The translations under genes and the position numbers were made by a program. 64,000 nucleotides of DNA, from the NCBI GenBank assembly GCA_965644295.1, contig CBFFRP010000457.1:161704-225703 (forward strand). Direction: 5' to 3'. The DNA is from Paraphysomonas bandaiensis (lineage: Eukaryota > Protista > Chrysophyceae). Within the stretch, counting starts at the first letter, position 1. Every line of letters begins with the position of its first letter. Shown one piece after another: positions 6,056 through 61,897 of this stretch. The notes below the pieces were generated by a model that ran no database searches, was not told the origin of the DNA, and was given only the letters and a program-made list of their open reading frames with translations.

Positions 6056-6935
6056 CGCAGACTGTGCACACCCCACAGACAACATGGCGCACATGCTTCT
6101 CACCTGCACTCACCCTGACATCATTCACATACGTGAAGATGTCCACCAAGCACACCACAATAAGCTTGACAAACTTCGCACACGCACGCTCCCCCATCCC
6201 TGGTTTTACACCGCCATAACTAAACTAGCCAAAGCCGCATGGAACCCAGCCACCCCCCAGGTTGAGCGCTACTGGACCGGCCACATTACTGCCACACAAA
6301 TGGCCGACGCATTCGGACGCCACATATCCAGCTCACTGCTCGAACATCAATTCCACGCCCTAGAAAAATCCATCGCCTCTATCCTACTCCCCCTATATGA
6401 TGGAGGGCTCCGTATGCTTCGCAATAGGGGACACAGACACCTCAACGTAGACACGGCACCGGCGACACCGGTCCCGACACACGCAAAGCCCCACCAGCCC
6501 CGACACCCGACACCAAAAGTACTCCAGCTACTCCAGGCGACATCCACCCCACGAACTACACTCTCTGCAAGAGCCCAGACCCGACAGAGGCAAGCGCAAC
6601 CACTCCGGAAACAACTTCTCCTTACTTGTAGCCGAAACCCCACCTCAACAACCAGCACCATCTCCACCACCGACTTGCACTCTCATATACAACTCGCCTC
6701 ACCCACCCCCCACATAATCCATGGCACAGGCCCGCCAGACACATTGCCCAAAGGTAGACCCCCCGACTAACCTCACTACAAGGGACGGTTGCACCATGGT
6801 GCTCGCAGCGATGCACAAGCAGTCCCGAGACGGTTGCCCGCCACTAGTAGTATATAGCAAATCTAGTTATTAGCTAGTCTATAGACATAAACTAGTTTCT
6901 GTACGCAACCGTACTCATGTAATAATCAGACTTTC
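6056..6935 (+). mobile_element. 5'-truncated non-LTR retrotransposon (LINE 3' end), no poly(A)
   Basis: 16-bp TSD ATATTTCCTATATTCC at 6040-6055 and 6936-6951. C-rich ORF to 6770 starts with a truncated zinc knuckle (C-AHPTDNMA-H-MLLT-C). Confidence 0.8.
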
Positions 6936-7059
6936 ATATTTCCTATATTCCAACGCAATGGATATTACTTCCCATTTACTTGAAGAAAATACTTAACAAG
7001 AAAATTAATTTCAATTTTTATAGTCCTAAAGTGAAAATGAAAACACTATCTATATACAG

Positions 7060-8852: not shown

Positions 8853-9058
8853 TTCATTGCATATGATCTCATATACATACACCCCTATAGTCCCATATGC
8901 GCCATACCATACTACGATACACACACACTGAGATGGAACACACCCTGCTGCTGTACCATGTACACGTCCAGCCATATACAGCGAAGTATACATCCAGAAG
9001 ACTACGAAGTGGACACCACCACCATATAGAGAACCTTTGATTGGCTGTGAAGTCTCGG

Positions 9059-9059
<1 letters not shown>

Positions 9060-9089
<30 letters not shown>

Positions 9090-9254
9090 TGTATGTATGT
9101 ATGTATGTATGTATGTATGTATGTATGTATGTATGTATGTATGTATGTATGTATGTATGTATGTATGTATGTATGTATGTATGTATGTATGTATGTATGT
9201 ATGTATGTATGTATGTATGTATGTATGTATGTATGTATGTATGTATGTATGTAT
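9060..9254 (+). repeat. (TATG)n microsatellite
   Basis: Perfect tetranucleotide array. Confidence 0.98.
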
Positions 9255-9323
9255 AGCTATGTGGTTCAGTGTATGTATGTGTGATGGGATTATAGTCATA
9301 TATATGTGTATCTATAGATCTGT

Positions 9324-11367
9324 ATGATGTCTGGAGACTCCGAACTCTACCAGTGCATAATCTGTCATGAACCTTACCGCCGAGAGGGTCGTTTATCTCC
9401 CGTAACTCTCATGTGCGGTCACTCTCTGTGTGTGGGGTGTTATGAGTCTCTTCCCTCATCATCAGCATCATCAGCAGCATCTTCCTCCTTATTATGTCCC
9501 ATATGCTCTCTTCCATGTCCCCCTCCATCCAAAAACACAACTCTATTAAAAGAGATTGCTTCAAGAGAGCTCGCATCATGTTCATTGGCTATACATACAC
9601 TGTGCAGTGAGTGTATGAGGACAACGAGCTCTGTATGCTGTGAAGAGTGCGATCGGATGCTATGCAGAAGATGTGACGATCGTCTACACAGACAGGGAGA
9701 TAGAACACAGCATCTGAGAGAGTGTACGCGAACGGAAGAGACGGATATGTGTGCCAGTCATATGCATCCGCTGACTCAGTACTGCAAGACGTGTGAGCGA
9801 TCTGTATGTGATGATTGTGCCTCGACTGGTGAACATGCTGCTCACGAGACGGGTGATCTAAAAAGCGTTGCTGCTAAAATAGAGAAGCGCATGTCCAACT
9901 ATAGGAAAGTACTGGAGCAGATATGCGCCGAAACGAGCTCGATGTCCTCTAATATTGAGCAATGTTTAGGCAATGCAGGTGTTGGTGATGAGAAAAATTC
10001 AGAATCATCATCTTTACGTAACGAGTGGAAGCAAACAGCAAGGAATTCTATCAACCAAACTTTTGAAAAGCTACATGCTGCTTTGCACAAACGACGCCAG
10101 GAACTGCTAACCATGGTGGATAACGTATACGAGGAGAAAAAGCTGCATTTGCTCGGACAAAATGCAAGCGCCAATAATCTCCATCGGAGTGCACACGAAT
10201 TGTTAGAAAAAATCGAAGAGTTTCCGCCGGATCGGGAGGCTTCTTTGGTTAGTTTGTACGGGGAACTACAAGAACAACTTGATGATTTAAACGAGGTCGA
10301 TATACATACTATGATAGGCCCCGTAAATGACCTACGAGTCCACACTTCTTTTGATACCAAAGACCTCGATGTGCTGTTTAGCATAGTTCATACCCTGGGC
10401 ACTGTTGGTGAGAAAGGAGAAGCTGGAAGGGATGTATCACAAAATAAAACTACCAGATCACGGTCTCCCGCCCCCTCTTCTTCGATAGGATCGAAGGGTG
10501 ACAATCGACCTGTCGGAAATATTGAGGAATCCGCTCCCCTGTCATTTGATGACTTATACGTAGGTATGGTTGTCGTGTACAGTTTATCTGGACTTATATG
10601 ATATGTGTGGAGAATGTTGAGTCCGTATGATTTATGTTTGCTTTTTTAGGGATGAGGGTGGACGCTCTCGATACTGTGAATAGATGGGCAGAAGCGGAGG
10701 TAAACGCCAACGTTCACGTCATTTTTGGTATATAATATCCTCTGCTACTACTAGTGCGGTGCATGACAACTACTCGCATACGATTACGAGATCTGACTGT
10801 GTACAATGTATTTCACTCTCCCTGTAACTGTGAACTGCCGTATTGTTCAGGTTTTAGAACTCGATGCGGGTGAGCGGGAAGTGCTTGTGTCGTACGTTTA
10901 TTGGCCCTCTGAGTGGAATGAATGGTTGCCTGTAAGAAGCGATGTAATTGCTCCTTTGAAAACGCACACCCTCTGCGCTGGGCGTGAGATTTGCGTGGGC
11001 CAGAGGGTAGAAGTATGTAATGGTGGAAGCGAATGGAGGGAAGCTTTCGTAACTAATGTCAATGGCTATCAGGTTTGAAGCAACTTCGCGTTACAGTCTG
11101 CATTTGCGTTGTTTTCTTGAGTTATGAGTGCTGCACTGCATGTATTTTAATGCGTGCACCTTATCATGATTGTAGATAATTAGGTACATGTAGGTGGAAG
11201 TCCTGTATGAAGACGACAAGCAGAAGGAGCGGAGCTTAACTGTGGATACTCGTATGGATCGTATCCGACAGTATGGTATTGCGGCTCAACCAAAGAAAAA
11301 AAGAGCAAGTACGTCGTCGTCAAAGTCGAATAATAGTAAGCAAGGCAAAAAGAAAGCACGTGCGTGA
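9324..11367 (+). CDS. RING / B-box / coiled-coil (TRIM-like) protein with C-terminal Tudor/MBT-like repeats
   Basis: CxxC..CGH..C RING, two B-boxes, coiled coil. Spliced exons GMRVDALDTVNRWAEAE, YVYWPSEWNEWL. Confidence 0.85.
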
Positions 11368-11573: not shown

Positions 11574-11621
11574 AAAATGTACGAATTTTCGATACCTTCC
11601 CTCGATACCCTTATGTGGTAG

Positions 11622-11753
11622 TGGATGTCCTATTATTAGCAATAGGCGTTTAAAAGTCAGAACTGGCTATATATGCGGCTCACGCTAGTTTCCCGGAGAA
11701 CTATCTCCGGTACAGATTGTACATATCCCTAGACCCGACTTTGTTGAGGGCTA
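11622..11753 (-). mobile_element. Minimal (132 bp) non-autonomous retroposon, family R
   Basis: 11-bp TSD TTATGTGGTAG (11611-11621, 11754-11764); family head joined directly to family tail. Confidence 0.75.
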
Positions 11754-11907
11754 TTATGTGGTAGGGGGTAGGGGTACATTGTTGTAGCGTTGTAAAATTT
11801 GGGGATTTACTGTTTTGAGTTAATCTAGAATCTAGTACAACACCATTCCCTAAGCTTTTGTGTAGGATTGATTAGAAACAATACTTTGATTTGTAATCGT
11901 TTTTATA

Positions 11908-13113
11908 TATTGAATGTCTGATTATTAAGAAGCGCAAGCTTGTGCGTTGCCGCGACCAACCTAACAACTCGCGCGACACTATGCATAACATGACTCTCAT
12001 CTAGTTACTATTGCATGCACCGACAAGTGCTCAACTATACAACACGATTTAGTTAGCTACATGGGCATACGACGAGTTGCGTGTTTAAGCCGGATCATAC
12101 GCTCCTGCCCAATCTACTTGTCCTGACACAAACAACTTGCGGTCGGTGTCTTCGGCATATGTCTCCTGTATATGCGGCAGATCTTTAGGGCCCTCTTCAA
12201 GGTGGTGTTCACAGCAGCAGGTAGTCTGGAAGGGAGAATAAAGTAGCTCTAGCGCCGGGTCCTCCCACGGTCACGAAGCGGTCTCACTGGTGCAATTTTG
12301 CACACTGACGCATGAAACAGACATCTACCAAAATCTGTTACAAATTCAAGCTGACTCCGATGTCTTCCCTCCATTGTGTGCACTCGTCCAGCACATGCAT
12401 CCACCTTGCACTCTTCTCCCGAGTGACTTACACTAGTAGGAAACCGTGCACCTTCCCCGCTCGGATGAAAACCTACTAAGCAAGAATAACATAAAAGCAC
12501 CACAAATGTACCTGACACTGCTTGGAGAACAGTGCCAGAGCCTTGATATAATCTCAATGACCTGGGTCAGAGGAGAAACCAAGACTAGGCAGTAGACGTG
12601 TGAGAAGACATAACAGGTCCAATCACATCATTGTCATTGCCATGCATCCATGAGGAAAGTTTGACGCATTACCTCGGTCATTGGCCACACAGATACCGAA
12701 TAATGTGAACTCATACTCAGCATCAATCACTCAAAGCAAACGCAGGGAGCAAGCAGAATGTTGATATACCTGACATCTGCTGACTTCAGGTTTTTTGAGT
12801 TCTCAAGGTGAACATCCCGGATGCTTAACTTCAGCAGGCAGCCCAATACCCCGGTTACCCTTCTGGTGGGCCCTGTCCCGGATGCCCTTGAGGTGGGCCC
12901 ATTCCCGGATGCCTGTTTATTCGTCAGGGCCCAAAGACGTCTACACAAGTGACACTTATTAGTGTCCCTTGTACCACACAAGCATTTGGCTATGAGTGGG
13001 CAGAACATATATCTGCTGACTATGTTTGCGGCTCACGTTAGTTTCCCGGAGAAATATCTCCGGTACTTATCCCCCAGAACACCACGAAAGGTGCGAGTCC
13101 GACTTTGTTGAGG
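11908..13113 (-). mobile_element. Long (1.2 kb) non-autonomous retroposon, family R
   Basis: 15-bp TSD GTAATCGTTTTTATA (11893-11907, 13114-13128); no TIRs; 3' end taataatcagacattca. Confidence 0.8.
13028..13113 (-). ncRNA. Candidate HDV-like ribozyme fold at retroposon 5' end
   Basis: P2 CGG(A)CTCGC/GTGAGCCG, P3 ACC/GGT, L3 TTTCGT, P4 CCGGAGA/TCTCCGG, J4/2 CTAA. P1 and P1.1 are imperfect. Confidence 0.5.
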
Positions 13114-13479
13114 GTAATCGTTTTTATAATTCTAATCAGGAGCATCTCTATTTCCTTTAATAGCGAGTAACAAGCTAAATTTCTATACATTCTAAATATT
13201 ATAAACATTAGGCTTTTAGCATCATGAAGATATGATATGATACGTAAAAACTCTATTATCCTACGAGAACTGCTTGTGTGTTGCCGCAAACACCAAGGTA
13301 CGAATTCTCTCTATATTATTCATAGGAGTGTGTGTAGGGGACGTTTTACACGTATAGCATGACAAGTGAAAGCAGTGATCTACAGCCACACTGAAACTCT
13401 TGAGGCTACACATACATATTTACGGCAGGCACCAGAGGGGAAGCAGCAAATACCCTTTTGAGTACGTTCTTTACAGTCA

Positions 13480-14218
13480 AGTAATGAGTGTCTTATTATT
13501 AGCAACAACAGCAACTGCTTAACTATTATGCTTAGCTATGATATTATCCTACTATTTAACGTCACCGCAAGCACCAAGAGGTGCAACCGCTTTCGCTTCA
13601 TCACTCAGAGCGAACGCAGTGATCAAGCAGAATATATAGTAAATTTGATATACTACATGACATACATCTCTTGTAGCACCTATTGCTAAAATATAGCATG
13701 CATGGAAATGAGAGTGTAATGACGGACATAGAAAAAATACTCACACACATACAGATGGATGTATATGAATGTACCACTTTGACATATTTAATTCTTTCTA
13801 TCTGTTGCTCGAGAATAATTAGTACCAACTAACGCAGCTTATAATGTTCATATATGCGTATAGGATGTGGTGTGTATGCTATAATGATGATTGTAAGTGC
13901 ATAATATATATATTTTATATAAGTAAAACATACATAATATAGCTAATATAGCAGTCAGTAATTATATGATGTGAGTAATGTTGTGATGAGCATGATGATG
14001 ATAATAGTATAACATCATAATAAATATATATATATATAAAGTAGTGATGATGTTGTGTAAAATACATGTACGAGTATGTAAGTAGTAAAATGATGATATA
14101 TATTATTGCAGTGTCCCTTGTACCACACAAGCATTTGGCTACGGGTGGGCAGAACATTCTCGGGTTACTATATATAAGTAGCTCACTTTAATTTCCGGAG
14201 AAATACCTCAGGTACTTA
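13480..14218 (-). mobile_element. Interrupted family R copy (tail 13480-13640, head 14108-14218)
   Basis: Both pieces match family R; AT-rich sequence lies between; no TSD found. Confidence 0.6.
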
Positions 14219-14289
14219 TAATTGCATTCCTTGGGATGTACTGGTGCTTAATATTATATTATATATTATGCTAGATATAGAACAAAGCT

Positions 14290-15414: not shown

Positions 15415-16815
15415 TTATATAATTCCACTATCAGCCACCTTACAGTTTCCAAATATTCTAGACAAGAAAGTCTGTGGCCGAGATTGCCGTGGCACCTCCA
15501 TAAGATATTCACCATCCTTAGTGACAGCATGTCGCATTGATGGCCGTTTCTCGTCATTCGAAATGACAGTAACTGTGACCCCAGTTTCCACAACTTCTGC
15601 GCTTTCAATCGCCTGAGGAGCTTCTGAAATAGGAATACCTTCATCGACAGGAACAATACGACTACTTCGTTTCGATTTCTCAGTACTGGAAGACAGTGAA
15701 TCAGCAGCAAGCGACACCGATGTGCATATCGTATGGTTTGTCGTCATAGATGAAGCATCGACGTCGTTCGCCTCCACTGTGTCTTTCTGTCCCTTACATA
15801 CACTCTTTATTCGACTTTGCCGTCTTGCTTTTGGATTATTTAATGGCACTCGCCGCACAAGAGCTGTAGTCTCTTTGACGTTGTGGATGACCTCCTTGGT
15901 AATCAAGTCCTGGATTGTAAAATGGGCCTTGGCATAAATGCTGGGAGAAACCCACAACTCTGTGTTCAACGCTTCTAGCAATGCCCACTCAAGAGCATTC
16001 ACGCGATCAATATGCAGGCCAGGAAACACTTGACAATAGTCACCGTTGATCATTGCGAAATCATCCCAAACTTTACTAGCCATCATCATGCCAGATAGAA
16101 CTACCCCTTTCCAATTTGTGTCGGTTAAAGTGAAAGTTCCATTGGAGAATTTAATCATTCGCTCAATGTAGACAAGAGTGACTACCATACATTCATACTC
16201 CATCTGAGTCTCAAAACATATTTTGTGAATAAAATTCGTGATCGCATCAATAGACGGCGCATTCGTTCCCTATAAGATATATTGTTACGACATATTTGAC
16301 GATGTAGACAGCGGGAATACAATGAATACAAAACTTACACTTGATAGAACATTCAACATTGAAAATCTTCTGATCGATCCTCCGGATGAAGCTCGCTTTC
16401 TTGATTGCTCAAAGGTTGAATATCGATCATCAGCAGCCCTCTCCGCATCAATTTTAGAACCAGAAAGAATTTTATTTCTTAGTAAGACACCCAAACACTT
16501 CGAAACAGTATACGGCGACACGACAACAGAGTCTAAACTCTTTGTTGTATCAGATGATATGTTCTCCGACCCCTCATCCCACTTCATCCACTCGTGTCGA
16601 CACAGTTTGCTGCTGCTCTCTTTCATTGAGTTAACAGCTGTTGCATGAACCACTGTGGTGTTACTGCGACCTCTCTCCACACTCACTGCAGTGGTTTCAA
16701 CATGAGAGTCGTTCTCAGGAACATAATTCATGGAACTAGAGCGGAAACGAGGGTCCTTATAAGCGGACTCCTCATGTGTAAAGTATTCAAAGTCTTCATT
16801 AGTATCTATAGCCAT
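15415..16815 (-). CDS. Cyclin Y / PHO80-like cyclin-box protein
   Basis: ECMVVTLVYIERM..MASKVWDD..NALEWALL; intron about 16270-16338. Confidence 0.8.
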
Positions 16816-29929: not shown

Positions 29930-31559
29930 TTATCCCCCAATTAATATCATTGGTCTATTCTTTGACACAGCTATCGATGCTGGAGAATTATGCCCCCCAA
30001 GGGCTTTATGCTTCGCTCTCACTGCACCACTGATCATATTAACGACGTCTGCATCACAGTATCCATCTAACAACAAAAAATACATCAGATCATAAGAGCA
30101 AGAAGCCAACGCCCAACAATCTGGACAACATACGTCTACATAGAATGAGTCGAAATAAGATGCACCCACACATGAGCAGAGTACTAATATGGCAAGACAT
30201 TCCATTGCTCTGCGGTATACAGCGTGGACGGATACGCATAGATTTGTTACCTCTAAACGCTTGCAATATGTTCAACTCATCACTACCAAATAGACAAACT
30301 TTTATTTTGCCATCTGCGGTAATCCTCAGTCGATTGCACCCACCACAGAAGTTGCTGCAGCAAAAAACAACGAATGAGACAATATACCATATATATGCAA
30401 TGTAAGGAGTTTAAGCGACACATAGGAAGTATTAAAACATGACATACAACATGTAGAAGCACGGCACACTATACGGTATATATATTTGATGAAATCGAAT
30501 ACATTATAAGAAGTGCGTTTAATAAACAATATCGCACCTGCTCATCGAAGTTATGAACCCAACTCTTCCCATATACCCCTCACTATCGCCAATGTCACTG
30601 GACTCATTTCCCTTCATACTACTACCTGCTGGTACAGAGGAGAATACACGATACCACTTAGTAGTGTCGTGGGGGTCCCGAACAGAAGATGTATCCTTGC
30701 GAATATCCACACCCTGGATAAGTATGAGTGTGTCAGAAGACAGTGTCAAAAAAAACTAATAGTAAATATGCATATACTCATGGCAAGTTATATGTGCACG
30801 ATTTATTCAACACATCAACGTACAAAATATGCATAGCAGTACCTTTTCTTTGAGAGTATCTATGGCTTCAAAATATGGAACCAGGGCTTTAGGATTCCAA
30901 TTGTTGTCATCGAAAGGCATTACCTCTATGAATCTAACATCTATAGGACTGTCTTTAGTTAGTTCCACAAAATCCGCTATCTCCGTATAGTTGACGTCTC
31001 TCATCAACACACAATTTACTTTAACTTTAAGATCTCTACTCGCAGCAGCATAGAGAGCACTCAACACATGTGCCAATCCTCTTTTATCACGTCTAACAAT
31101 TGATGCAAATCTATCAGGGTTTAGTGTATCCAGTGAGATATTGACATGAGTCAACCCCGCGTCACATAACTTATCCAACTGAGACTTCAACACTAATCCA
31201 TTAGTGGTAATACCGATACTCTTAATGGTCTCGATGTCCCTGCAGTGTCGTATGAGTTCAGGCAGTGATTTATTAACAGTCGGTTCTCCTCCAGTGAATC
31301 TGATTTTATCAACACCACCAGCAGCAAAGAGAGAGATGAGTCTCTTTCTTTCATTAAGATTCATAAGTGAATCATTCGGTGTGAGTGTAACTCCGTCTAG
31401 AGGCATGCAATACACACAACGGAAGTTGCATTTCTCAGTAATGCTCATCCGAAGATAGTTATGAAACCGACCGAATGTATCAACGAGCATATGAGAAGAC
31501 TCATTGGGAGAAGGGGATGATGAGAGAACCCTTCGGACTGCACCTGCAGATCGTCTCAT
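29930..31559 (-). CDS. moaA: GTP 3',8-cyclase (molybdenum cofactor biosynthesis, CNX2/MOCS1A)
   Basis: CNFRCVYC radical SAM motif, RFTGGEP, RFIEVMP, C-terminal RPMILIGG; spliced. Confidence 0.95.
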
Positions 31560-39869: not shown

Positions 39870-40391
39870 TTATGCATAATCGTCAAGAGCTGGGTCGTAT
39901 ACATTGTAGTTAGCAGCTCTTTCCTTGAATTTGGCACCATAGACCGGTAGAATCACGAGAGTATTTAGAAACAGAAAAGAAAGTGTATAAATAAGATACC
40001 CAACAGCCATAAATGGAAGAGAAAATATAAAGAACAGCAATGCGCAAACCATCCCCATTGCCGTCTGCTTGTTGCTGTCTGTCCCAAGATTCCATAAACC
40101 CTTCCCGACAAACATAACGCCCACATGAACACAGTGACACACATAGTGACCCACCACAAGAAACACGAAGACGGTAACAAACACTGTAGCTAAGATTGCA
40201 TAGCCCAGAGAGTTCCATACTGTGCATAGTGCACCCGGCAGAGAGCCCTGCCGCTCATCAACGACACACGCCTGCTGCTCCTCGTCAGATAACACCTCAA
40301 TCCTCTCCGCAACAACAGCATCCCCCACAGGATCAGCCCTTGGAACAACTGTATGCTCACTTTGACTATCCTTAGCGACACCTTCACTCAT
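39870..40391 (-). CDS. Small multi-pass membrane protein
   Basis: MSEGVAKD start at 40391; hydrophobic segments. Confidence 0.6.
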   Translation of the reverse strand: MSEGVAKDSQSEHTVVPRADPVGDAVVAERIEVLSDEEQQACVVDERQGSLPGALCTVWNSLGYAILATVFVTVFVFLVVGHYVCHCVHVGVMFVGKGLWNLGTDSNKQTAMGMVCALLFFIFSLPFMAVGYLIYTLSFLFLNTLVILPVYGAKFKERAANYNVYDPALDDYA

Positions 40392-40422
40392 CCTCACCAC
40401 TGAAGAACTTTGCTCATACTTC

Positions 40423-40567
40423 CATACACACATACATACATACATACATACATACATACATACATACATACTTCCATACACACATACATACATACATACA
40501 TACATACATACATACATACATACATACATACATACATACATACATACATACATACATACATACACAC

Positions 40568-40598
<31 letters not shown>

Positions 40599-41036
40599 CA
40601 TACATACATACATACATACATACATACATACATACATACATACATACATACATACATACATACATACATACATACATACTTCCATACACACATACATACA
40701 TACATACATACATACATACATACATACATACATACATACATACATACATACATACATACATACATACATACATACATACATACATACATACATACATACA
40801 TACATACATACATACATACATACATACATACATACATACATACATACATACATACATACATACATACATACATACATACATACATACATACATACATACA
40901 TACATACATACATACATACATACATACATACATACATACATACATACATACATACATACATACATACATACATACATACATACATACATACTGTACATAC
41001 ATACATACATACATACATACCTACATACATGTATGT
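40423..41036 (-). repeat. (TATG)n microsatellite, ~600 bp
   Basis: (CATA)n on + with recurring variant units. Confidence 0.98.
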
Positions 41037-41848
41037 ACGGAAAATGGCGTTTTCTGATATTTTTTCTGGTTTTATAGTTGTATAGTGTTGCTTTTCTCTA
41101 ATATCCGGATATTTCGTACTGATACAAGCCTATAAAAGTAGAGATTTACAGGCATATCTTACTGTATAGCTATAGCTGGGCACCTTCAGAGGTGCTTGAG
41201 AGGCCCTCGAGTCAAGTGAGTCTCCTGGCCCACACTCATCTGACAATGATACTGACATACGAGTCATACCGTGTGTGTTGTATACTCGTAAACATCATCA
41301 GCACAGCTGCACTCATTGTCTCATAGGCACACAGCTGCACTGCTGCGCCTCGTATGATCGTTGACATCTAGAAGAGTATCGCAGGCGACTCAATGCATGG
41401 AAGTCCATCGCTGGTTGCTATCAGAGTGCTACCTACAGAGATGTCAGTGTGGAGCTATAGGCGAAGAGACAAGACACAGTCGTGTATACCGCAGCAGTGT
41501 TAGTTCTATCCAGTCGGCCTTAGCTTTCACTCAACGATTGAAGTGATTGATGCTGAGTTTGGCTGTTTGCGAGCACTGAAAGCATTTGAATGATGACCGT
41601 TAATGGGGGAATACAGAAGTGTTTAACAGTATTATGCGAACTAACGTCATGATAGTAATCAAGTAGTAGTGTGGCTGAGATATACTGACCGTATAAGGTC
41701 GTGATGTATCTCAGATTATGTCAAAAAGATTCGTAGTTGCAGTAGCATAGATTTGGCGATTGACAATAAATAAATGGTAAGTGATATTGATCATGATTTT
41801 ACTAGTTTATAATTCAAGCATTGAGTGTGTATATTACGCTTTTATAGT

Positions 41849-42868
41849 TGCATTCATGCACCAACAAGTGCGCAACTATACAACACGATTTAGTTAGCTA
41901 CAGGGCCATAGAAACGAGTTGCGTGTTTAGTCGGATCATACGCTCCTGCCCAATCTACTAGTCCTGACATAAACAACTTGCGGTCCGTGCTCTTCGGCAG
42001 ATCTTTAGGGCCCTTCAAGACGATGTTCACAGAAGCAGGTAGTCTGAAAGGGAGAGTAGCGTAGCTCTAGCGCTGGGTCCTCCCAACGTCACGAGGCGGC
42101 CTCACAGGTGCATTTTTTCTCACACTGACGCTTGAAACAGACGTCTACCAAAATCCAAACTGGTTCCTAAACGTCTTCCCTCCATTATTGCGTGCATTCG
42201 TCCAGCACATGCACCCACCTTGCACTCTTCTGCCGAGCGACTTCGCTAGTAGGAAGCCCTAGCTTTCTCCTCTCGGATGAAAGCCTATTAAGACGAAGTA
42301 TCATCACAACACCACCAATGTACCTATCACTGCTTGGAGAACAGTGCCAGAGCCTTTTTATAATTTCAATGACCTGGGTCAGGAGAAACCAACTAAGCAG
42401 TAGACTTGTAGTAGACATAATAGTAGGTCTAATCACATTGCCGAGGAAAGTTTGACGCATTACCTCTGTTATTGACCACAGAGATGCCAAGTACTTTAAA
42501 CATATATTCGGCATCAATCACACTTAAAGCAAACGTAGTGAGCAAGCAGAATGTTGGTATACCTGTAATCTGTTGACTCAAGATTTTCGAGTCCTCAGGG
42601 TGATCTCATCCCGGATACTTGTCTTCAGTAGGCAGACCAACCCCCGGATGACTTTGAGGTGGGCCTATTCCCGGATGCCTGTTTATTCGTCAGGGCTCTA
42701 CACAAGTGACATTTATTTGTGCCCCTTGCACCACACAAGAATTTGGCCATAAGTGGGGGGAAATTATCTGCTGAGTGTGTATATGCGGCTCACGTTGGGT
42801 ATTCATCTCTGAAATGTCTCGGGTATTTATCCCCAAGAACACCACGAAAAGGTGTGAGTCCGACGTCG
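41849..42868 (-). mobile_element. Long family R retroposon copy lacking the tail motif
   Basis: Colinear with 12010-13105; 8-bp flanking repeat TTTATAGT. Confidence 0.75.
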
Positions 42869-43296
42869 TTTATAGTGATAACAGAATGAGCAAAAGTCAA
42901 TATTATACAAGAGCTATTAATGAACTACGTTGAACTACAGCATTTTGTTAAGCTAAACTTAACACAAGGATGTGAATAGAAAAATCAGAATAGTTCTGCG
43001 AATATTACTAATAATAGAGCTTGGGTATTCGACATCTATTCATAAGAAATACTGTTTTCGCAGTCAGACAGTTTTGCTAGGTCTGAGCTCTAAAGTGAGG
43101 AAACCGTTATACTCTGACGATAATTTTTGCTTCAGGATCATGGCATATAAAAGTACACGCAGTACAACATATACATGAATTAGTCGTCTAAAAACAGAGA
43201 AAATCCTATATATCATTTGTGATGTCACTTTTGTCATATTCGGATAATGAAACTTAAGTAACTGAACTTGAACTCACACACAGTAAAAAAAACAGA

Positions 43297-44240
43297 GATA
43301 TAGGGAACAATATAATAGCAATACCATTGTTAGGTAGCGTTCCGTCAATATTATTTTAAACCGATCCAACAATATTGCTATGTATGTATCATTACTCCCA
43401 CCTTTTCGTAGTGTTCTGGGGGATAAGTACAGGAGATATTTCTCCAGGAAAAACTAACGTGAGCCGCATGTGTAGTCAGCAGATATTGTTCTGCCCACTC
43501 ATAGCCAAATGCTTGTGTGGTACAAGGAACACTAATAAATGTCACTTTTGTAAACGTCTTTGGGCCTTATTGACGAATACACAGGCATCCGGGAATGGGC
43601 CCACCTCAAGGATTTTGTGTGATAGAGCGAAAGTGGTTGCATCTTGGTGCTTGGTGCTTGCGGTGCCGTACAAGCAGCTTTCGTAGAGCTAAATAGCAGA
43701 ATATCAGAGTTAAGCATTGACTCTTAAACGCCTACTGCTAATAATAAGGCATTCACTACTGTATCATTAATCAGTAGGTAAACCCCTCCGTTGATTCCAT
43801 TTTTAGTATACTAGTCAGTAAGATCACACATACATGATAACCAAACCCACAACTCCTTAGCTAATAACTATTTTCTTCCTACTCATTCTCTGAGTCATCG
43901 TCGGTGCCGTCAACATTACCATATATATTCATTCACAAACTTAATTGAAATATGCTTGCATCCGGCCACAACTGTCGATTAGATTTCAGAAACAACAGCA
44001 TATATATTAAGTGTAGTAGGAAGTAGGATGCATAAGTTTACGTAGCGCTGATATAATATATTAGCTGCGGTGAACAGGCGTTCACATGTATTTGAAGTAC
44101 ATACTACATGACTCGTGCACCACGCATACATCTCGTTGTGTGTATGCACCTGTACTTAAATATTTCAAGTTTTCGTTTCTTAATTTTTTGAGCTACCGAA
44201 GAAATTTTTCCGCGTAGCCAACATCAGCCATAAATTGCAA
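43297..44240 (-). mobile_element. Degenerate copy of the 21427 hAT element, interrupted by family R
   Basis: tagggaacaatat end; 43830-44230 matches 21640-21990. Confidence 0.75.
43395..43759 (+). mobile_element. Short (365 bp) family R retroposon
   Basis: 10-bp TSD TGTATCATTA (43385-43394, 43760-43769). Confidence 0.8.
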
Positions 44241-48214: not shown

Positions 48215-48447
48215 CACACACATACATACATACATACATACATACATACATACATACATACATACATACATACATACATACATACATACATACATACATA
48301 CATACATACATACATACATACATACATACATACATACATACACTACATACATACATACATACATACACTACATACATACATACATACATACATACATACA
48401 TACATACATACATACATACATACATACATACATACATACATACACAC

Positions 48448-48478
<31 letters not shown>

Positions 48479-48547
48479 CATACATACATACATACATACA
48501 TACATACATACATACATACATACATACATACATACATACATACACAC

Positions 48548-48578
<31 letters not shown>

Positions 48579-48679
48579 CATACATACATACATACATACA
48601 TACATACATACATACATACATACATACATACATACATACATACACACATACATACATACATACATACATACATACACAC

Positions 48680-48710
<31 letters not shown>

Positions 48711-48874
48711 CATACATACATACATACATACATACATACATACATACATACATACATACATACATACATACATACATACATACATACATACATACATACA
48801 TACATACATACATACATACATACATACATACATACATACATACATACATACATACATACATACATACATACATA
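48215..48874 (-). repeat. (TATG)n microsatellite, ~660 bp
   Basis: (CATA)n on +. Confidence 0.98.
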
Positions 48875-49095
48875 CCAGTATATTATCATATATTCCTCAA
48901 AAACTAGAAAAACCCGGATATCTTACCCTTTCCTGTCTCCTCCGGCATGAAAACCCCTCTTTTCTACAGCCTGTAGAGTGCACCACCTCAATCTTGGTGT
49001 GGTCTTGAGATGGCTGCTAGTGTGTGTATATATACATACATATTCTTCTCTATGTTCCAGTGAGGCGTAGCATCAACAGCAACCTCAGTGCTGAT

Positions 49096-55115: not shown

Positions 55116-58100
55116 TGTTAGAAATAGACATTTTTAGTAATAAGACCTTCGTTAACACTTATATGGAATATTATATAATTATGAGTGATACCATACTTCA
55201 TTCATTGACGTTCACCAACTCTTTCTATCTCTACTACACCAACCATTTCTAGTACGATCTTATATCGTCACTATCTTGTACAGTCAGTATATTTCAGTTT
55301 TATCACTACAATGGCTATCATATTATTGGTTCTCATACTACAGCTAGCTACTACTGTATTCTTTGAGTAACGGATATAATTCTAATATCTTGGAAACTAC
55401 AGCTTTTAATTGCTCACAAACAGCAAAACTCAACACTCCCTCTCAATTCAAAGCTGTAAAACATGGCATAACTGACGGATACGCAACCACCGAAACCGTA
55501 TAGGACAAACCGGTGGACGTATGGCTCCGACGTTTCAGCTAGCCTCTCCGTAGACAACACGTTTATGAGCCTCTGTTTCGTTTGTATGAATTCTCTCTGA
55601 TGACATCCACAGATGACTTCTGATCTTCTCCTAGACATCTCTTTCTATGCTTCTCGTATATAACGCCACACAAAGATTTCGTAAATATGTCTGCAGTCTG
55701 GTTATCAGTTCCAACGTGATACAATATCGCAGTGTTAAAACGTCCTTCTGGATCTACATGTTCACGCACCCAGTGGTATTTGATTTCAATGTGTTTTGAT
55801 CTTTTGTGGAACACTGGATTTAATGCTAGATCACGAGCACTCTGGCTATCTAAAAAGAATGGAGTGGGTTCGTACAGTCGAAGTCCCAATTCGGCCAACA
55901 CCCCCCGAAGCCACACCAGTTCTTGCATGCCAGCGTACATAGCTTGGTACTCACTCTGCATTGAAGACGTAGACACAGTAACTTGTAAGATTGATTGCCA
56001 GGTGAGTGGTCCACCTGCTGCAAACACAATGTATCCAGTTGTCGACCTTCGTGACACAGTATCGCCTGCCCAGTCAGCATCTGTGAAAATATGCATGTCA
56101 AAGCTCTTACCACTGAACCGAATACCTTTCCGCACAGTACCCCTGATGTATTGTAACAAATAAGTCATCAACTTGCATGTAGCCTTTGTTGGTTTCGAAG
56201 CATATCGTGACAATAGGCCAACAGCATACGCAATATCTGGACGCGTATTCATTGATAGATATAGCATGGCACCTAGTAAGCTACGATAGGGATAATTGTC
56301 GACTCCCTCTTCCTCCTGAGATGAGTTCTCACTATCAGTGCAATTAATCCTGTCCATGGCATCTACAGGTAGTGGGGATTTGCGAACTTTGTTTGAAGGT
56401 CCAAGGAATGCTGCATATTTGGTGAGAATTTTTTCAGCGTATGTCGATTGGTCAAGTTGAATATAATTCTTGGTCCTTGTAACTCGAACGTTGAGAAAAT
56501 GCTCTAATTCTCCCATGTCTGACATGTCAAATCTTTCACAAAACCGTTTCTTGATTTCTGTCAAAATAGTCAGATCCGCACAAGCGATTACTATATCATC
56601 AACGTATATGGTTAAGTACACACGATGACCTTTGTACATCATATAATATAGGTATGGTTCTAAAATACAGGGTTTGAATCCCAAAGACTTTATAAATCCA
56701 TGTATGGTCTTCCACCATGAACGTGGAGAACTCCGAAGGCCATATAGTGAGCGATATAGTTTGAAACAGTGTCCTGGTGGCAACTGAAAATCGGGAGGAG
56801 GGTCCATGTACACGTCTCCTTCGATTTTAGCATAACAGAATGCATTCGACACGTCAAGTTGATGGATGTGCATACTAAACATGAAAGCAAGTGCAATGAT
56901 TAGTCTAACCGTAATCGATTTCACCACAGGAGCAAATGTATTTTCGACGTCTATACCTGTCCTTTGACCATATCCCAGAGCGACCAGACGAGCTTTATGC
57001 TTTTTTATTGATCCATCTTTATTGTATTTTCGTTTGAACACATATCTGGACTTTAGAGGTCTAACACCAGGTGGCGTCTCAACGACATTAAACACTTCCC
57101 GCTTGAATAATGCATTCCGTTCTAATCGTCTAGCTTCCTTCCAATTTGAAGCTTCAGGACATGTCAATGACTCTTCATACGTCTCAGGCTCTCTATAAGT
57201 AGACGAGTTAGACATAAGTGCGCAATCACTCTCATCACACAAGTTAACAATCTCCTCGTCATGGAGAAGGTTTACCTCACCCAGGGTGGACACATTAGTC
57301 AACACCCTTCGGGTTCGCGTACGTTTACCACTGGTCTCCCTTGACTCAGCATGTACAGTACCACTATTCTCACTGGGCACACAAGAAGGTACATTCTCAA
57401 AGACACGATTCGCGCTGACCCCACTCGGTACAGCACCCGCACTACTCTCCGGCAAAGTACGAAGGGACATTCTCTTCCCTGGAATCTCATCCGCCGTAGA
57501 CTTATTGGGCGTGTCACCCGAAGCCGGCGTAGATGACGATCCACCTCTCTTGTCGTCACAAGAACGAGGTTTTGAGTACAGCCTGCGGTTATAGTCACCA
57601 GTCAACTCGGCAATATCACGTACGTGAATAGGGACTTTTTCTTCTATCTGCTCTTTCCCAGCAGTTACTAGCGCCCTAAACGCCACAATTAGTCCTTTTC
57701 GCACCACAACTCTCGTAGTCTTGAAGAGAAACCCGTCGTCCACATGATACGAACCAATCAGATGTTTAAACTCTTCAACTGATCGATCTAATGGGTCAGT
57801 TTTGACTAAGGCCTCTTCAAGCTCTGCATAGTACTCCTTATCTCTTGGAGGTATACTTTCATCATACAGAACATGTACTGATACGACTTCTTTGTCACCA
57901 AGCCACACACGGGATCCCTTTTTCGTATTGGATAGACCTATGAAATACCCAGTCTGTGACTTCTCCTGCCAATCCTTTCGACGATCACCTTTGGGAATAA
58001 GCACATAAGCCTTGCACCCCCAGCGTCGAAATCTCGATAAGTCAGGGACTGAACCTCCTGGAACGCACTCCATTGGAGACATCCAACCTCGATATGTACG

Positions 58101-60317
58101 TGTAGGCATTCGTCGAACGATCATGCATGCATATACATAAGCATCCCACCAAAAAATTACGGGTAATCCTGAGTCCATTAACAGAGCCAGAGTCATTTCT
58201 CCCAATGTTCGATTCCTACGCTCAGATACACCATTCATCTCAGGGCTGTCTGTGGAGCTCCAAGTGATGCTAGTTCCAAACTTGCTCATTAAGTATTGCT
58301 GAATGGACTTGTCGATCAACTCAGCCCCCCCATCCGAATGGTACTGTATCAACCGGTGTGAACCGGGATATGTAGGGAGTTTACGCTCAACCCAGTCCTT
58401 CACGCAACTCAACACCTCATTCGCAGACCGTGTCTCCAACGGATATTCCCAAAACTCCTTGGTGGCTATATCTGATAATGTCAGAACATATTTATATCCT
58501 TGTCTGGATGGGCAATTGAAATATACAGCAATGTCCACAGAAACCTTCTCAAGGAACTCTGTAGCTTGCAGTTCGTCATCTCTCTTTGCGGTGAATGATT
58601 TCCTTGTCATCTTTGATTTTGCGCAAGCCTTACAAATACCTTTCATTTTTCGTAAACTCTTCTTGCTGAGATGTCGTCGGGTTAATCCGCTCCCGGTAAA
58701 AAGTCTGTGTTTAAATGCTTCAATCAGCTTATGTTTGCTGACGTGTCCACAGCGCTTGTGTAACATCTCTAACGGATCTTCATGCACCTTGTCGGACAAA
58801 TATACTTCCTCCGGCATTGTCAAATTTGGAAGATCAAGTATTTCCTGTAAGTTTACGTAAGGCATTCCGTTGCTTGAGTAGGTTGCCTCCAATACAGTCT
58901 CCCCAGTATCAAGTCGCACAACAGTGGGGTTGTTCAACAACTGCAATCCATACCCGTGAGAACGGAGTATTCCTCCAGAGCAGATATTCTTGACTGATCC
59001 AGGGCAGATCTTGATGTCAGTCCAATCGCCAAAGCCTCCAGTTTCCTCATAGTGTAAACTTGATCCAGCTCTGGTTGTCTGGATATCTCCATCCTCCATC
59101 CACATACATAACAGCCATCTGATTTTTTCTTCTCGTTGTTGTCTCTGCGACTCTCAGATCGATTCCTAGCGACTCGACTCTTTCCCTGCCTTCTTAATTT
59201 CGCAATCTTAAGATCTCTCTTCTTCTTCCAGCACGATTTCTGTGAGTGGCCCCGTTTGCCACATTTGGGATAGCTGCACACCTCATTTTCATCAGCAGTG
59301 GAATTCATGTTTACTTCGTCGGTGCCTTCTTTCGGGACACCTTTTGCCTGATCGTATCTCCTGCATATGGTGATCATATCAATAAAGGTTATGTCACCTT
59401 GTAGGTAGAGATTGGTGTACAGTTGCTCCAAATCGCTTCGTGTTTCGAGGGCAGTCTGTAACTTCGTTTTTTTAGCGATGTCAGTGGGTGGTTCCCCCAA
59501 CTCGGACATTTTTTGACAGATGCCGTTTAGTCGATCGATTGCTGCGCACACGAGTTCCCCCGGTAGAATTTTGAATCCTGCAAACTTCTTATTCAATTCA
59601 ACTAATTCATATTGGATTTCCCCTCTAAACCGAACAATTAACCTAGAGATGAGTTCACTCGCTAACTGCTCTTTATCAGGATGGTCCTGCGGGAGCATAT
59701 CCTTTTCCCGGAAGTACTGATCCACGATCTCAAGGGCTTCAGCGACTGGTTGAACAGCTTCAAATATCGAACTGATGCACGTGTCTTTCCTCTCCAGCCA
59801 CTTGTCCAGATCCTCCTTGTACTTATTTCGGACTGTCACTGGCGCATTATTTGCTGGTCTTACTGGACGGTCCTCTAGACCCAGATGGTTCCTGTTCTTC
59901 CTCATCAACCACACTTTCAGATTCTTTGACCAATTCACTACACCGAACTGATCAAATTTGGGAAGAAGTTTCCACTCCGAACTACTGTCTGCTACCATGT
60001 TAGAAATAGACATTTTTAGTAATAAGACCTTCGTTAACACTTATATGGAATATTATATAATTATGAGTGATACCATACTTCATTCATTGACGTTCACCAA
60101 CTCTTTCTATCTCTACTACACCAACCATTTCTAGTACGATCTTATATCGTCACTATCTTGTACAGTCAGTATATTTCAGTTTTATCACTACAATGGCTAT
60201 CATATTATTGGTTCTCATACTACAGCTAGCTACTACTGTATTCTTTGAGTAACGGATATAATTCTAATATCTTGGAAACTACAGCTTTTAATTGCTCACA
60301 AACAGCAAAACTCAACA
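55116..60317 (-). mobile_element. Ty1/copia LTR retrotransposon, recent, with gag/protease deletion
   Basis: 320-bp TG..CA LTRs (55116-55435, 59998-60317), identical by eye; TSD AAGGT; PBS TGGTAGCAGA; PPT; INT-RT(YVDD)-RNaseH(DADWAG) order. Confidence 0.97.
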
Positions 60318-61339: not shown

Positions 61340-61467
61340 GGTGATCACACTTATCACTGACCAGGTTAAACGAGTTGGAATAATGTCACACTCTGCATAT
61401 GAATGAAGCAGATGCTGGATTGGGACAATCAGCACGCGCACCTACCACACCACCACCACATGCTCTC

Positions 61468-61804
61468 TATGTACGTATGTATGTATGTATGTATGTATGT
61501 ATGTATGTATGTATGTATGTATGTATGTATGTATGTATGTATGTATGTATGTATGTATGTATGTATGTATGTATGTATGTATGTATGTATGTATGTATGT
61601 ATGTATGTATGTATGTATGTATGTATGTATGTATGTATGTATGTATGTATGTATGTATGCATGTATGTATGTATGTATGTATGTATGTATGTATGTATGT
61701 ATGTATGTATGTATGTATGTATGTATGTATGTATGTATGTATGTATGTATGTATGCATGTATGTATGTATGTATGTATGTATGTATGTATGTATGTATGT
61801 ATGC
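61468..61804 (+). repeat. (TATG)n microsatellite
   Basis: Near-perfect array. Confidence 0.98.
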
Positions 61805-61897
61805 AGGATAGGATCGTGTCTTGTTATGTGGGTATTTGTATAATTGAACGTGTGTCTTTGTTAAAAATTAAAGCTCCTTGTCTGTTCTAATTGAAGA

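What the first reader, a model, noticed from the sequence alone, without database searches (positions are those of the whole stretch)
13028..13113. HDV-like ribozyme topology at the 5' end of family R
Seen: consensus GCCCTCAAC AAAGT CGGACTCAC ACC TTTTCGT GGT GTTCTGGG GG ATAAGTACCGGAGA TATT TCTCCGGGAAA CTAAC GTGAGCCG. This gives P2, P3 with an L3 ending CGT, GG, P4, J4/2 CTAA with the catalytic-position C, and P2', in HDV order. Copies at 42786-42868 and 43395-43467 keep P2/L3; 11676-11753 has lost P3/L3. Known: HDV-like ribozymes process 5' ends of R2, RTE and L1Tc elements. Caveat: P1 pairs only 6 of 8 and the P1.1 C is T in the copies that retain L3, so these may be dead or a variant fold.
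Basis: partly seen in the sequence, partly recalled or inferred. Interest (0 to 1): 0.8.

Follow-up and report, generated by a model that had tools for sequence, protein, structure and literature searches.

The report
Self-cleaving RNA head of a retroposon
The first 86 bases of a very abundant short retroposon in a marine chrysophyte-like alga fold like the HDV-like ribozyme known from the 5' ends of trypanosome L1Tc/ingi elements; this form was previously reported only from trypanosomatids, and cleavage has not been tested.

Summary
On the minus strand, 13114-13029 is the fixed 5' end of a full-length retroposon with target-site duplications. It carries P2, P3/L3, P4 and a C-containing J4/2 in HDV order.

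- **Type of ribozyme.** The fold is the trypanosomatid Pr77/L1Tc kind, not the HDV/R2 kind. A covariance model built only from three Trypanosoma congolense Pr77 sequences ranks the two intact R heads first in 130 kb. It matches them end to end and starts at the element's 5' end (22.4 and 19.1 bits, E 0.001 and 0.008; next hit E 1). A sequence-only model gives 6.5 bits or less.
- **P1 and P1.1.** P1 pairs 8 of 8 with a 2-nt bulge. P1.1 is a single U-A pair, where Pr77 has A-U. J1/4 (7 nt) and J4/2 (9 nt) match Pr77 in length and mostly in sequence.

The best named relatives of the host's proteins are chrysophytes.

What is missing:
- Rfam finds nothing.
- The family is too uniform for covariation within it.
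- RNA 5' ends could not be read.
- No cleavage has been shown.

About 30 unchecked first-stage notes flag the same head elsewhere in this genome.

The parts
11908..13114 (-). Full-length long copy of retroposon family R, running from the 5' end at 13114 to the 3' end at 11908
   Evidence: Target-site duplications flank it. blastn against the other copies. Contig depth rises and falls at both ends.
13115..13128 (-). Upstream copy of the target-site duplication. It is 15 bp if C 13114 is counted.
   Evidence: The same 14-15 letters recur at 11907-11893.
11893..11907 (-). Downstream copy of the target-site duplication
12727..13114 (-). 5' module of about 390 nt, 4-10 times more abundant than the rest of the long element. 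Most copies join it directly to a LINE-type tail, giving a short SINE-like form.
   Evidence: Depth table, and loose ends at 12726. Short copy at 43394-43760.
13107..13114 (-). P1 5' strand CCCUCAAC. The predicted cleavage site is 5' of C 13114.
   Evidence: Alignment to the model. Pair table.
13093..13101 (-). P2 5' strand CGGACUCGC, with A 13098 bulged
   Evidence: MFE fold. Duplex energy -10.7 kcal/mol.
13081..13092 (-). P3 (ACC/GGU) enclosing L3 (UUUCGU). It contains CGTG, which is the downstream promoter element in Pr77.
13071..13080 (-). P1 3' strand GUU[CU]GGGGG. The bulge is at 13077-13076.
13064..13070 (-). J1/4 AUAAGUA, 7 nt as in Pr77. A 13070 pairs with the third U of L3 to form P1.1.
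13046..13063 (-). P4 hairpin, 7 bp with loop UAUU
   Evidence: Variants keep the pairing.
13037..13045 (-). J4/2 GAAACUAAC. The candidate catalytic C is at 13041.
   Evidence: Aligned to GAAGCUAAG of Pr77.
13029..13036 (-). P2 3' strand GUGAGCCG
41845..42875 (-). Older copy, 78% identical. P2/P3/L3 are kept, P4 is destroyed, and the 3' tail is missing.
43394..43760 (+). Short copy with a 5'-truncated head and a LINE-type tail
11620..11753 (-). Mini copy of about 130 nt with its own 11-bp target-site duplication. It keeps the normal 5' end but lacks P2-5'/P3/L3.
6084..6936 (+). 3' fragment of an APE-type LINE. Its 3' terminus shares the motif TAATAATnAGrCwTyCA with the R tails.

Best explanation
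The first 86-87 nt of family R form an HDV-like self-cleaving ribozyme module of the Pr77/L1Tc type. R itself is a non-coding retroposon copied by an APE-type LINE.

Proposed mechanism:
- R RNA is made either as part of a longer host transcript or from an internal promoter in the same 86 nt.
- The head folds into the nested double pseudoknot: P1 paired with the segment just 3' of P3, P1.1, P2, P3 and P4.
- The cytosine at 13041 in J4/2 catalyses cleavage just 5' of C 13114.
- The result is an RNA with one fixed 5' end. The LINE enzyme then copies it from the shared 3' tail.

Shown here: the fixed 5' end, the retroposon anatomy, and the segment-by-segment match to Pr77 ribozymes.
Inferred: cleavage itself, the cleavage site, and any promoter role.
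For: 1. **Independent model.** Model R1 was built from three T. congolense Pr77 sequences only. It scores the two intact R heads at 22.4 and 19.1 bits (E 0.0012 and 0.0077), over the full model 1-95, starting at 13113. The best unrelated hit in 130 kb scores 10.5 bits (E 0.99). The same sequences modelled without structure give 6.5 bits or less.
2. **Segment table.**
   - P3 ACC/GGU is identical to L1Tco, which the paper reports as highly active.
   - J1/4 is 7 nt in both and ends in AGUA, followed by the C that opens P4.
   - J4/2 is 9 nt in both, with 7 of 9 letters identical, including the C.
   - P1.1 is U-A where Pr77 has A-U.
   - P1, P2 and P4 differ in sequence but pair in both groups, with similar duplex energies.
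3. **Start of P1.** It begins with C1 and three C-G pairs, which one search gives as the feature that sets the trypanosomatid ribozymes apart from HDV/R2.
4. **Fixed 5' end.** It is seen in about 150 contigs at different insertion sites, with target-site duplications.
5. **P4 variants keep pairing.** These are a G.U change, and a loop change plus an insertion that together add a G-C pair.
Against: - Rfam finds no ribozyme of any kind, even at E up to 10.
- P1 needs a 2-nt bulge. One search reports that irregular P1 stems are uncommon and have been linked to loss of activity in vitro.
- Most copies have a 6-nt L3, and L3 positions 2-3 are UU, not CA as in Pr77 or CC as recalled for HDV.
- The MFE fold of the head is a competing nested structure (-26.6 against -24.1 kcal/mol for P2+P3+P4).
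- RNA-library contigs run across 13114 into flanking sequence. These are either uncleaved RNA or DNA carry-over.
- A mini copy without the ribozyme core still has the normal 5' end.
- The model's E-values are rough, and the model rests on three sequences from one species.
- Some well-folded Pr77 copies were inactive in vitro.
Confidence: 0.6

Rival explanations
1. The head is mainly, or only, an internal RNA polymerase II promoter of the Pr77 kind, with initiation at +1 directed by the downstream CGTG element. On this reading the HDV-like fold is an inherited relic that no longer cleaves.
For: - Pr77 is a proven promoter whose CGTG lies at +25 to +28. R has CGTG at about +29 to +33.
- A mini copy lacking the ribozyme core has the same 5' end.
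- RNA-library contigs cross the predicted cleavage site.
- P1 is bulged and L3 is shortened.
Against: - Most of the match to Pr77 lies in base pairing rather than in sequence.
- P1, P2 and P4 differ in sequence between R and Pr77 yet stay paired. That points to a constraint acting on the RNA.
- In Pr77 the two functions coexist.
Confidence: 0.2
2. The match is a chance resemblance. The head is an ordinary structured 5' region with two real hairpins that happens to fit a loose HDV template.
For: - The loosened descriptor hits shuffled sequence as often as the real window.
- Fold z-scores are only -0.4 to -1.8.
- Plain global alignment to Pr77 gives z of only 1.4 to 2.2.
- Rfam is silent.
Against: - The Pr77-only model ranks the two intact heads first, about 9-12 bits above all other sequence in 130 kb, in full length and at the exact 5' end.
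- The junction lengths and motifs coincide.
Confidence: 0.1
3. The folded head serves another RNA-level role, such as binding of the LINE proteins, RNA stability or translation start, and does not cleave.
For: - The conserved three-way junction P2/P3/P4 is recovered by MFE folding.
- HDV-like heads of other retrotransposons are reported to affect translation (title of the reference cited).
Against: - R is non-coding.
- LINE recognition is expected at the shared 3' tail.
- This reading does not explain the Pr77-like junction motifs.
Confidence: 0.1

Closest known systems
Pr77 hallmark / L1TcRz: the HDV-like ribozyme and internal promoter at the 5' end of trypanosomatid L1Tc, ingi, NARTc, RIME and SIDER elements
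   Same: - It occupies the first 77-95 nt of LINE-dependent retroposons.
- It starts with C1 and three C-G pairs.
- P3 is ACC/GGU, and L3 ends in CGU.
- CGTG is present.
- P1.1 is a single pair.
- J1/4 is 7 nt and ends in AGUA, followed by the C that opens P4.
- J4/2 is 9 nt, GAA(A/G)CUAA.
- A model built from Pr77 alone finds the R heads.
   Different: - The host is a chrysophyte-like stramenopile, not a trypanosomatid.
- P1 has 8 pairs with a CU bulge instead of 7 uninterrupted pairs.
- L3 positions 2-3 are UU, and L3 is 6 nt in most copies.
- The P1.1 pair is flipped.
- The P2 and P4 sequences are unrelated.
- Neither cleavage nor promoter activity has been tested.
- The clade of the partner LINE is not determined.
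HDV, CPEB3 and R2-type HDV-like ribozymes
   Same: The same nested double-pseudoknot order, a 3-bp P3, a C in J4/2 followed by NAA, and (for R2, RTE and others) a position at the retrotransposon 5' end.
   Different: - There is no G1.U start.
- There is no two-pair G-C P1.1.
- No Rfam HDV-family hit is found, even at E up to 10.
SINEs with small-RNA heads (tRNA, 5S, 7SL, snRNA)
   Same: A short, very abundant, non-coding retroposon with a LINE-derived 3' tail.
   Different: The head matches no tRNA and no Rfam small RNA.

Membership tests
HDV-like self-cleaving ribozymes (general) | Strand order of the nested double pseudoknot: P1, P2, P3, L3, P3', P1', P4, J4/2, P2' | tested here: met
   The segments are present in this order.
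HDV-like self-cleaving ribozymes (general) | P1 of 6-7 uninterrupted pairs that starts at the cleavage site and lies directly 3' of P3' | tested here: inconclusive
   There are 8 pairs, but with a 2-nt bulge after pair 5. Read another way, there are 6 contiguous pairs with a 4-nt linker. Irregular P1 stems are reported as uncommon and linked to low activity.
HDV-like self-cleaving ribozymes (general) | Cytosine in J4/2 placed a few nt before P2' | tested here: met
   C 13041 in GAAACUAAC aligns with the C of the Pr77 J4/2.
HDV-like self-cleaving ribozymes (general) | Match to a curated HDV-family covariance model in Rfam | tested here: not met
   No hit at gathering score, nor at E up to 10.
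HDV-like self-cleaving ribozymes (general) | Mg-dependent self-cleavage 5' of nt +1, abolished by changing the catalytic C to U | not testable with these tools
   This needs in vitro transcription. All sequencing runs were held as contigs, so RNA ends could not be read.
Pr77 / L1Tc-type HDV-like ribozyme | Occupies the first 77-95 nt of a LINE-dependent retroposon with a fixed 5' end | tested here: met
   Target-site duplications and a sharp 5' boundary at 13114.
Pr77 / L1Tc-type HDV-like ribozyme | +1 is C, with two or three consecutive C-G pairs at the base of P1 | tested here: met
   C1-G, C2-G and C3-G. The feature is as described.
Pr77 / L1Tc-type HDV-like ribozyme | Conserved core: P3/L3 containing CGTG, single-pair P1.1, AGUAC before P4, GAAGCUAAG in J4/2 | tested here: met
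   21 of 27 positions outside P1 and P2 that are invariant among the three Pr77 sequences are identical in R, with no gaps in those segments. This is my count.
Pr77 / L1Tc-type HDV-like ribozyme | Significant score against a model built from Pr77 sequences only | tested here: met
   22.4 and 19.1 bits, E 0.0012 and 0.0077, against 10.5 bits for the best other hit. The E-values are rough and the model has only three sequences.
Pr77 / L1Tc-type HDV-like ribozyme | Carried by the partner LINE as well, and that LINE belongs to the ingi/L1Tc clade | tested here: inconclusive
   The partner is an APE-type LINE. No contig reaches its 5' end, model R1 finds no head on L002-L004, and its clade was not determined.
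Pr77 / L1Tc-type HDV-like ribozyme | Internal RNA polymerase II promoter activity | not testable with these tools
   Only the CGTG motif at a similar distance from +1 is seen.

The most novel reading that the evidence does not exclude
The Pr77 promoter/ribozyme module, so far treated as a hallmark of trypanosomatid L1Tc/ingi elements, also exists and works in a stramenopile. There, in a variant with a bulged P1, it would head a SINE-like family represented by tens of thousands of assembled contig pieces. That would mean the module is either very old among APE-type LINEs or has moved between distant protist lineages.
Probability: 0.35. Interest if true: 0.75.

Novelty: new member of a known kind. 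Interest (0 to 1): 0.6.

Why it matters
HDV-like ribozymes at retrotransposon 5' ends are known. The Pr77 form, however, has been described only in trypanosomatids, where it also acts as a promoter and influences host gene expression.

An active copy in a free-living marine chrysophyte would have three consequences:
- It would widen the known host range of this module across eukaryotic supergroups.
- It would give a second, distant set of sequences for separating the ribozyme constraints from the promoter constraints.
- It would explain how a SINE-like family without a small-RNA head obtains a defined 5' end.

It also offers a natural test of whether the HDV fold tolerates a bulged P1.

Tried and rejected
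- **Rfam** on the whole window and, permissively, on the head: nothing found.
- **Two scans of JGI metagenome contigs and one of viral contigs** with head patterns: no match, so no further copies were obtained.
- **Protein handles to fetch more copies.**
  - The 93-aa ORF inside the head module gave only one 1.3-kb scaffold, L001.
  - The copia ORF is not on record.
  - The genome itself is not in the protein collection.
- **Reads.** All runs were held as contigs, so RNA 5' ends could not be measured. The variant table was cut at 40 rows.
- **A 'compensatory' change** in the 78% copy (C to A with G to U) was rejected as evidence. It fits two different P1 registers and also a competing hairpin, and the first 8 nt of that copy may be target DNA.
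- **tRNA or small-RNA head**: rejected.
- **Euglenozoan host**: set aside, because the best named relatives are chrysophytes.
- **Protein atlas look-ups**: the service was busy.
- **Head on LINE contigs L002-L004**: not found, because their 5' ends are missing.

Three Pr77 sequences of 78-95 nt were typed from the supplement text shown.

Full report
**What is at the coordinates.** A blastn of the region against the window finds these family copies:
- 12002-13109
- 41845-42870, same orientation, 78% identical
- 43394-43611, opposite orientation, 90% identical
- fragments at 14103-14219 and 11663-11713

The copy at 13114 is a complete insertion. The same 14-15 letters lie just upstream of its 5' end (13128-13115, or to 13114) and just after its 3' end (11907-11893). 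The element therefore runs from 13114 to 11908. No tRNA gene and no Rfam family is found anywhere in the window.

**The 5' end is fixed and the family is very large.** I laid Logan contigs of two DNA runs and two RNA runs on 11850-13250.
- About 29,600 and 8,900 contig pieces lie on the element in the two DNA runs.
- Summed depth falls from over 200,000 to about 20-150 beyond 13118.
- 65 and 91 contigs stop matching at 13114 and continue into AT-rich sequence with no consensus (agreement 0.38). These are many different insertion sites sharing one 5' end, CCCTCAAC.
- The first 390 nt or so (12727-13114) are 4-10 times deeper than the rest. At 12726 most copies continue with a different sequence that resembles the LINE-tail stem-loop.
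- The commonest form is therefore a short SINE-like element. The copy at 43394-43760 is an example.

R tails and a LINE fragment at 6084-6936 share a 3' terminal motif. That fragment's ORF carries a Cys/His motif. It is homologous to the C-terminal part of proteins that follow APE and RVT_1 domains on other marine scaffolds. R is thus a non-autonomous, LINE-dependent retroposon.

**Host.**
- The stretch is held by marine metagenomes and polyA metatranscriptomes.
- The best named relatives of the MoaA-like ORF at 30807-31559 are all chrysophytes: Pedospumella/Spumella 61%, Mallomonas 57%, Chrysophyte H1 57% and Chlorochromonas 54%.
- The LINE-tail ORF matches a Paraphysomonas transcript at 63%.
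- I take the host to be a chrysophyte-like stramenopile. It is not a trypanosomatid.

**Testing the fold as first proposed.** MFE folding recovers P2, P3 and P4, but the z-scores are only -0.4 to -1.8.
- The MFE of the 87-mer is a competing nested fold.
- A descriptor requiring at most one P1 mismatch, or a C in P1.1, rejects the head.
- A descriptor loosened just enough to accept it finds 3 sites in the window, against a mean of 3.7 in shuffles.
- Rfam finds no ribozyme even at E up to 10.

By these tests alone the claim would be weak.

**The Pr77 comparison.** Papers on L1Tc state three relevant points:
- The trypanosomatid ribozymes start with C1 and have two or three C-G pairs at the base of P1.
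- Their P1.1 is a single pair.
- The same 77 nt act as a promoter with a CGTG element at +25 to +28.

The supplement of PMC4035085 prints Pr77 sequences, among them L1Tco, whose 78-nt ribozyme is reported as highly active.

I aligned three T. congolense sequences (A3) and built a covariance model with P1, P3 and the outer pairs of P4 (R1). I searched it with filters off over the window plus L001, 130 kb counting both strands.
- The two best hits are the two intact R heads: L001 70-158 (22.4 bits, E 0.0012) and window 13113-13027 (19.1 bits, E 0.0077).
- Both cover model positions 1-95 and start at the element's 5' end.
- The next hit scores 10.5 bits (E 0.99).
- The same alignment modelled without structure gives 6.5 bits or less. 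So about 13-16 bits come from base pairs in the Pr77 register.
- Plain global alignment is weak, with z of 1.4 and 2.2.

**The resulting anatomy.** Positions below are numbered on the 7-nt-L3 consensus.

| Segment | R head | Pr77 |
|---|---|---|
| P1 | C1-G45, C2-G44, C3-G43, U4.G42, C5-G41, bulge C39 U40, A6-U38, A7-U37, C8-G36; best duplex -8.7 kcal/mol | 7 uninterrupted pairs; -7.6 to -10.4 kcal/mol |
| P3 | ACC/GGU | the same in L1Tco |
| L3 | UUU(U)CGU | UCAACGU (L1Tco); UCAUCGC in the two SIDER sequences |
| P1.1 | U (third nt of L3) with A (first nt after P1') | A-U at the same two places |
| J1/4 | 7 nt, ending in AGUA followed by the C that opens P4 | 7 nt, the same ending |
| J4/2 | 9 nt, GAAACUAAC | 9 nt, GAAGCUAAG |
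| P2, P4 | unrelated sequence, paired | unrelated sequence, paired |

Conserved junctions combined with variable but paired helices are what a shared RNA structure predicts.

Within the family, the common P4 variants keep pairing. One gives a G.U pair. A loop change together with an insertion adds a G-C pair.

**What remains against it.**
- The P1 bulge, the 6-nt L3 in most copies and the UU in L3 are departures whose effect is unknown.
- Irregular P1 stems have been linked to inactivity, and some well-folded Pr77 copies are inactive.
- RNA-library contigs cross 13114. This could be uncleaved RNA or DNA carry-over.
- A 130-nt mini copy with its own target-site duplication keeps the 5' end but lacks the ribozyme core. 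Its deletion may have arisen during or after copying.
- The family is too uniform for covariation within it. Only two substitution sites reach 5% in the head.
- No contig reaches the partner LINE's 5' end.

**Verdict.** The head is best read as a Pr77/L1Tc-type HDV-like ribozyme module, possibly doubling as a promoter, in a lineage where it has not been reported in the held literature. Catalysis is inferred, not shown. About 30 first-stage notes on other pieces of this genome make the same proposal, and some name the ingi/L1Tc resemblance. They are unchecked and do not count as independent evidence.

Noticed in passing
window 55116-60297: A copia-type LTR retrotransposon with two 300-nt LTRs that are 100% identical. 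It has an intact 1180-aa pol ORF and a gag ORF on the minus strand, so it looks like a very recent insertion.
   Followed up: partly
window 40257-41000, 48344-48877, 61380-61842, 8972-9378: Long arrays of a repeat with an 8-nt period. Some lie in opposite orientation to each other (93-99% complementary arms) and overlap mechanical ORFs.
   Followed up: no
L001 1-160: A 5'-truncated R head in inverted orientation abuts the 5' end of a full-length head. This is either a nested insertion or an assembly chimera. Joints between opposite strands were also seen when contigs were laid on the region.
   Followed up: partly
window 12727-13008 (-): A 93-aa ORF on the sense strand of the R head module. 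It recurs at 96% identity as a 147-aa called protein on a Tara scaffold. It has no known domain and is probably spurious.
   Followed up: partly
window 11620-11753 (-): A mini R copy of about 130 nt, made of the 5' end, P4 and the tail, with an 11-bp target-site duplication. Three extra letters (TAG) lie between the duplication and CCCTCAAC.
   Followed up: partly
window 13071-13101 (-), head nt 15-45: The P2 5' strand can pair instead with the P3'/P1' region (GGACUCAC with GUGG.GUUC). This gives a competing hairpin that wins in the MFE fold. It could act as a folding switch, as described for L1Tc.
   Followed up: partly
window 15415-16815 (-) and 30807-31559 (-): The cyclin-like and MoaA-like genes appear split into adjacent ORFs or cut short, which suggests short introns in this genome.
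   Followed up: no
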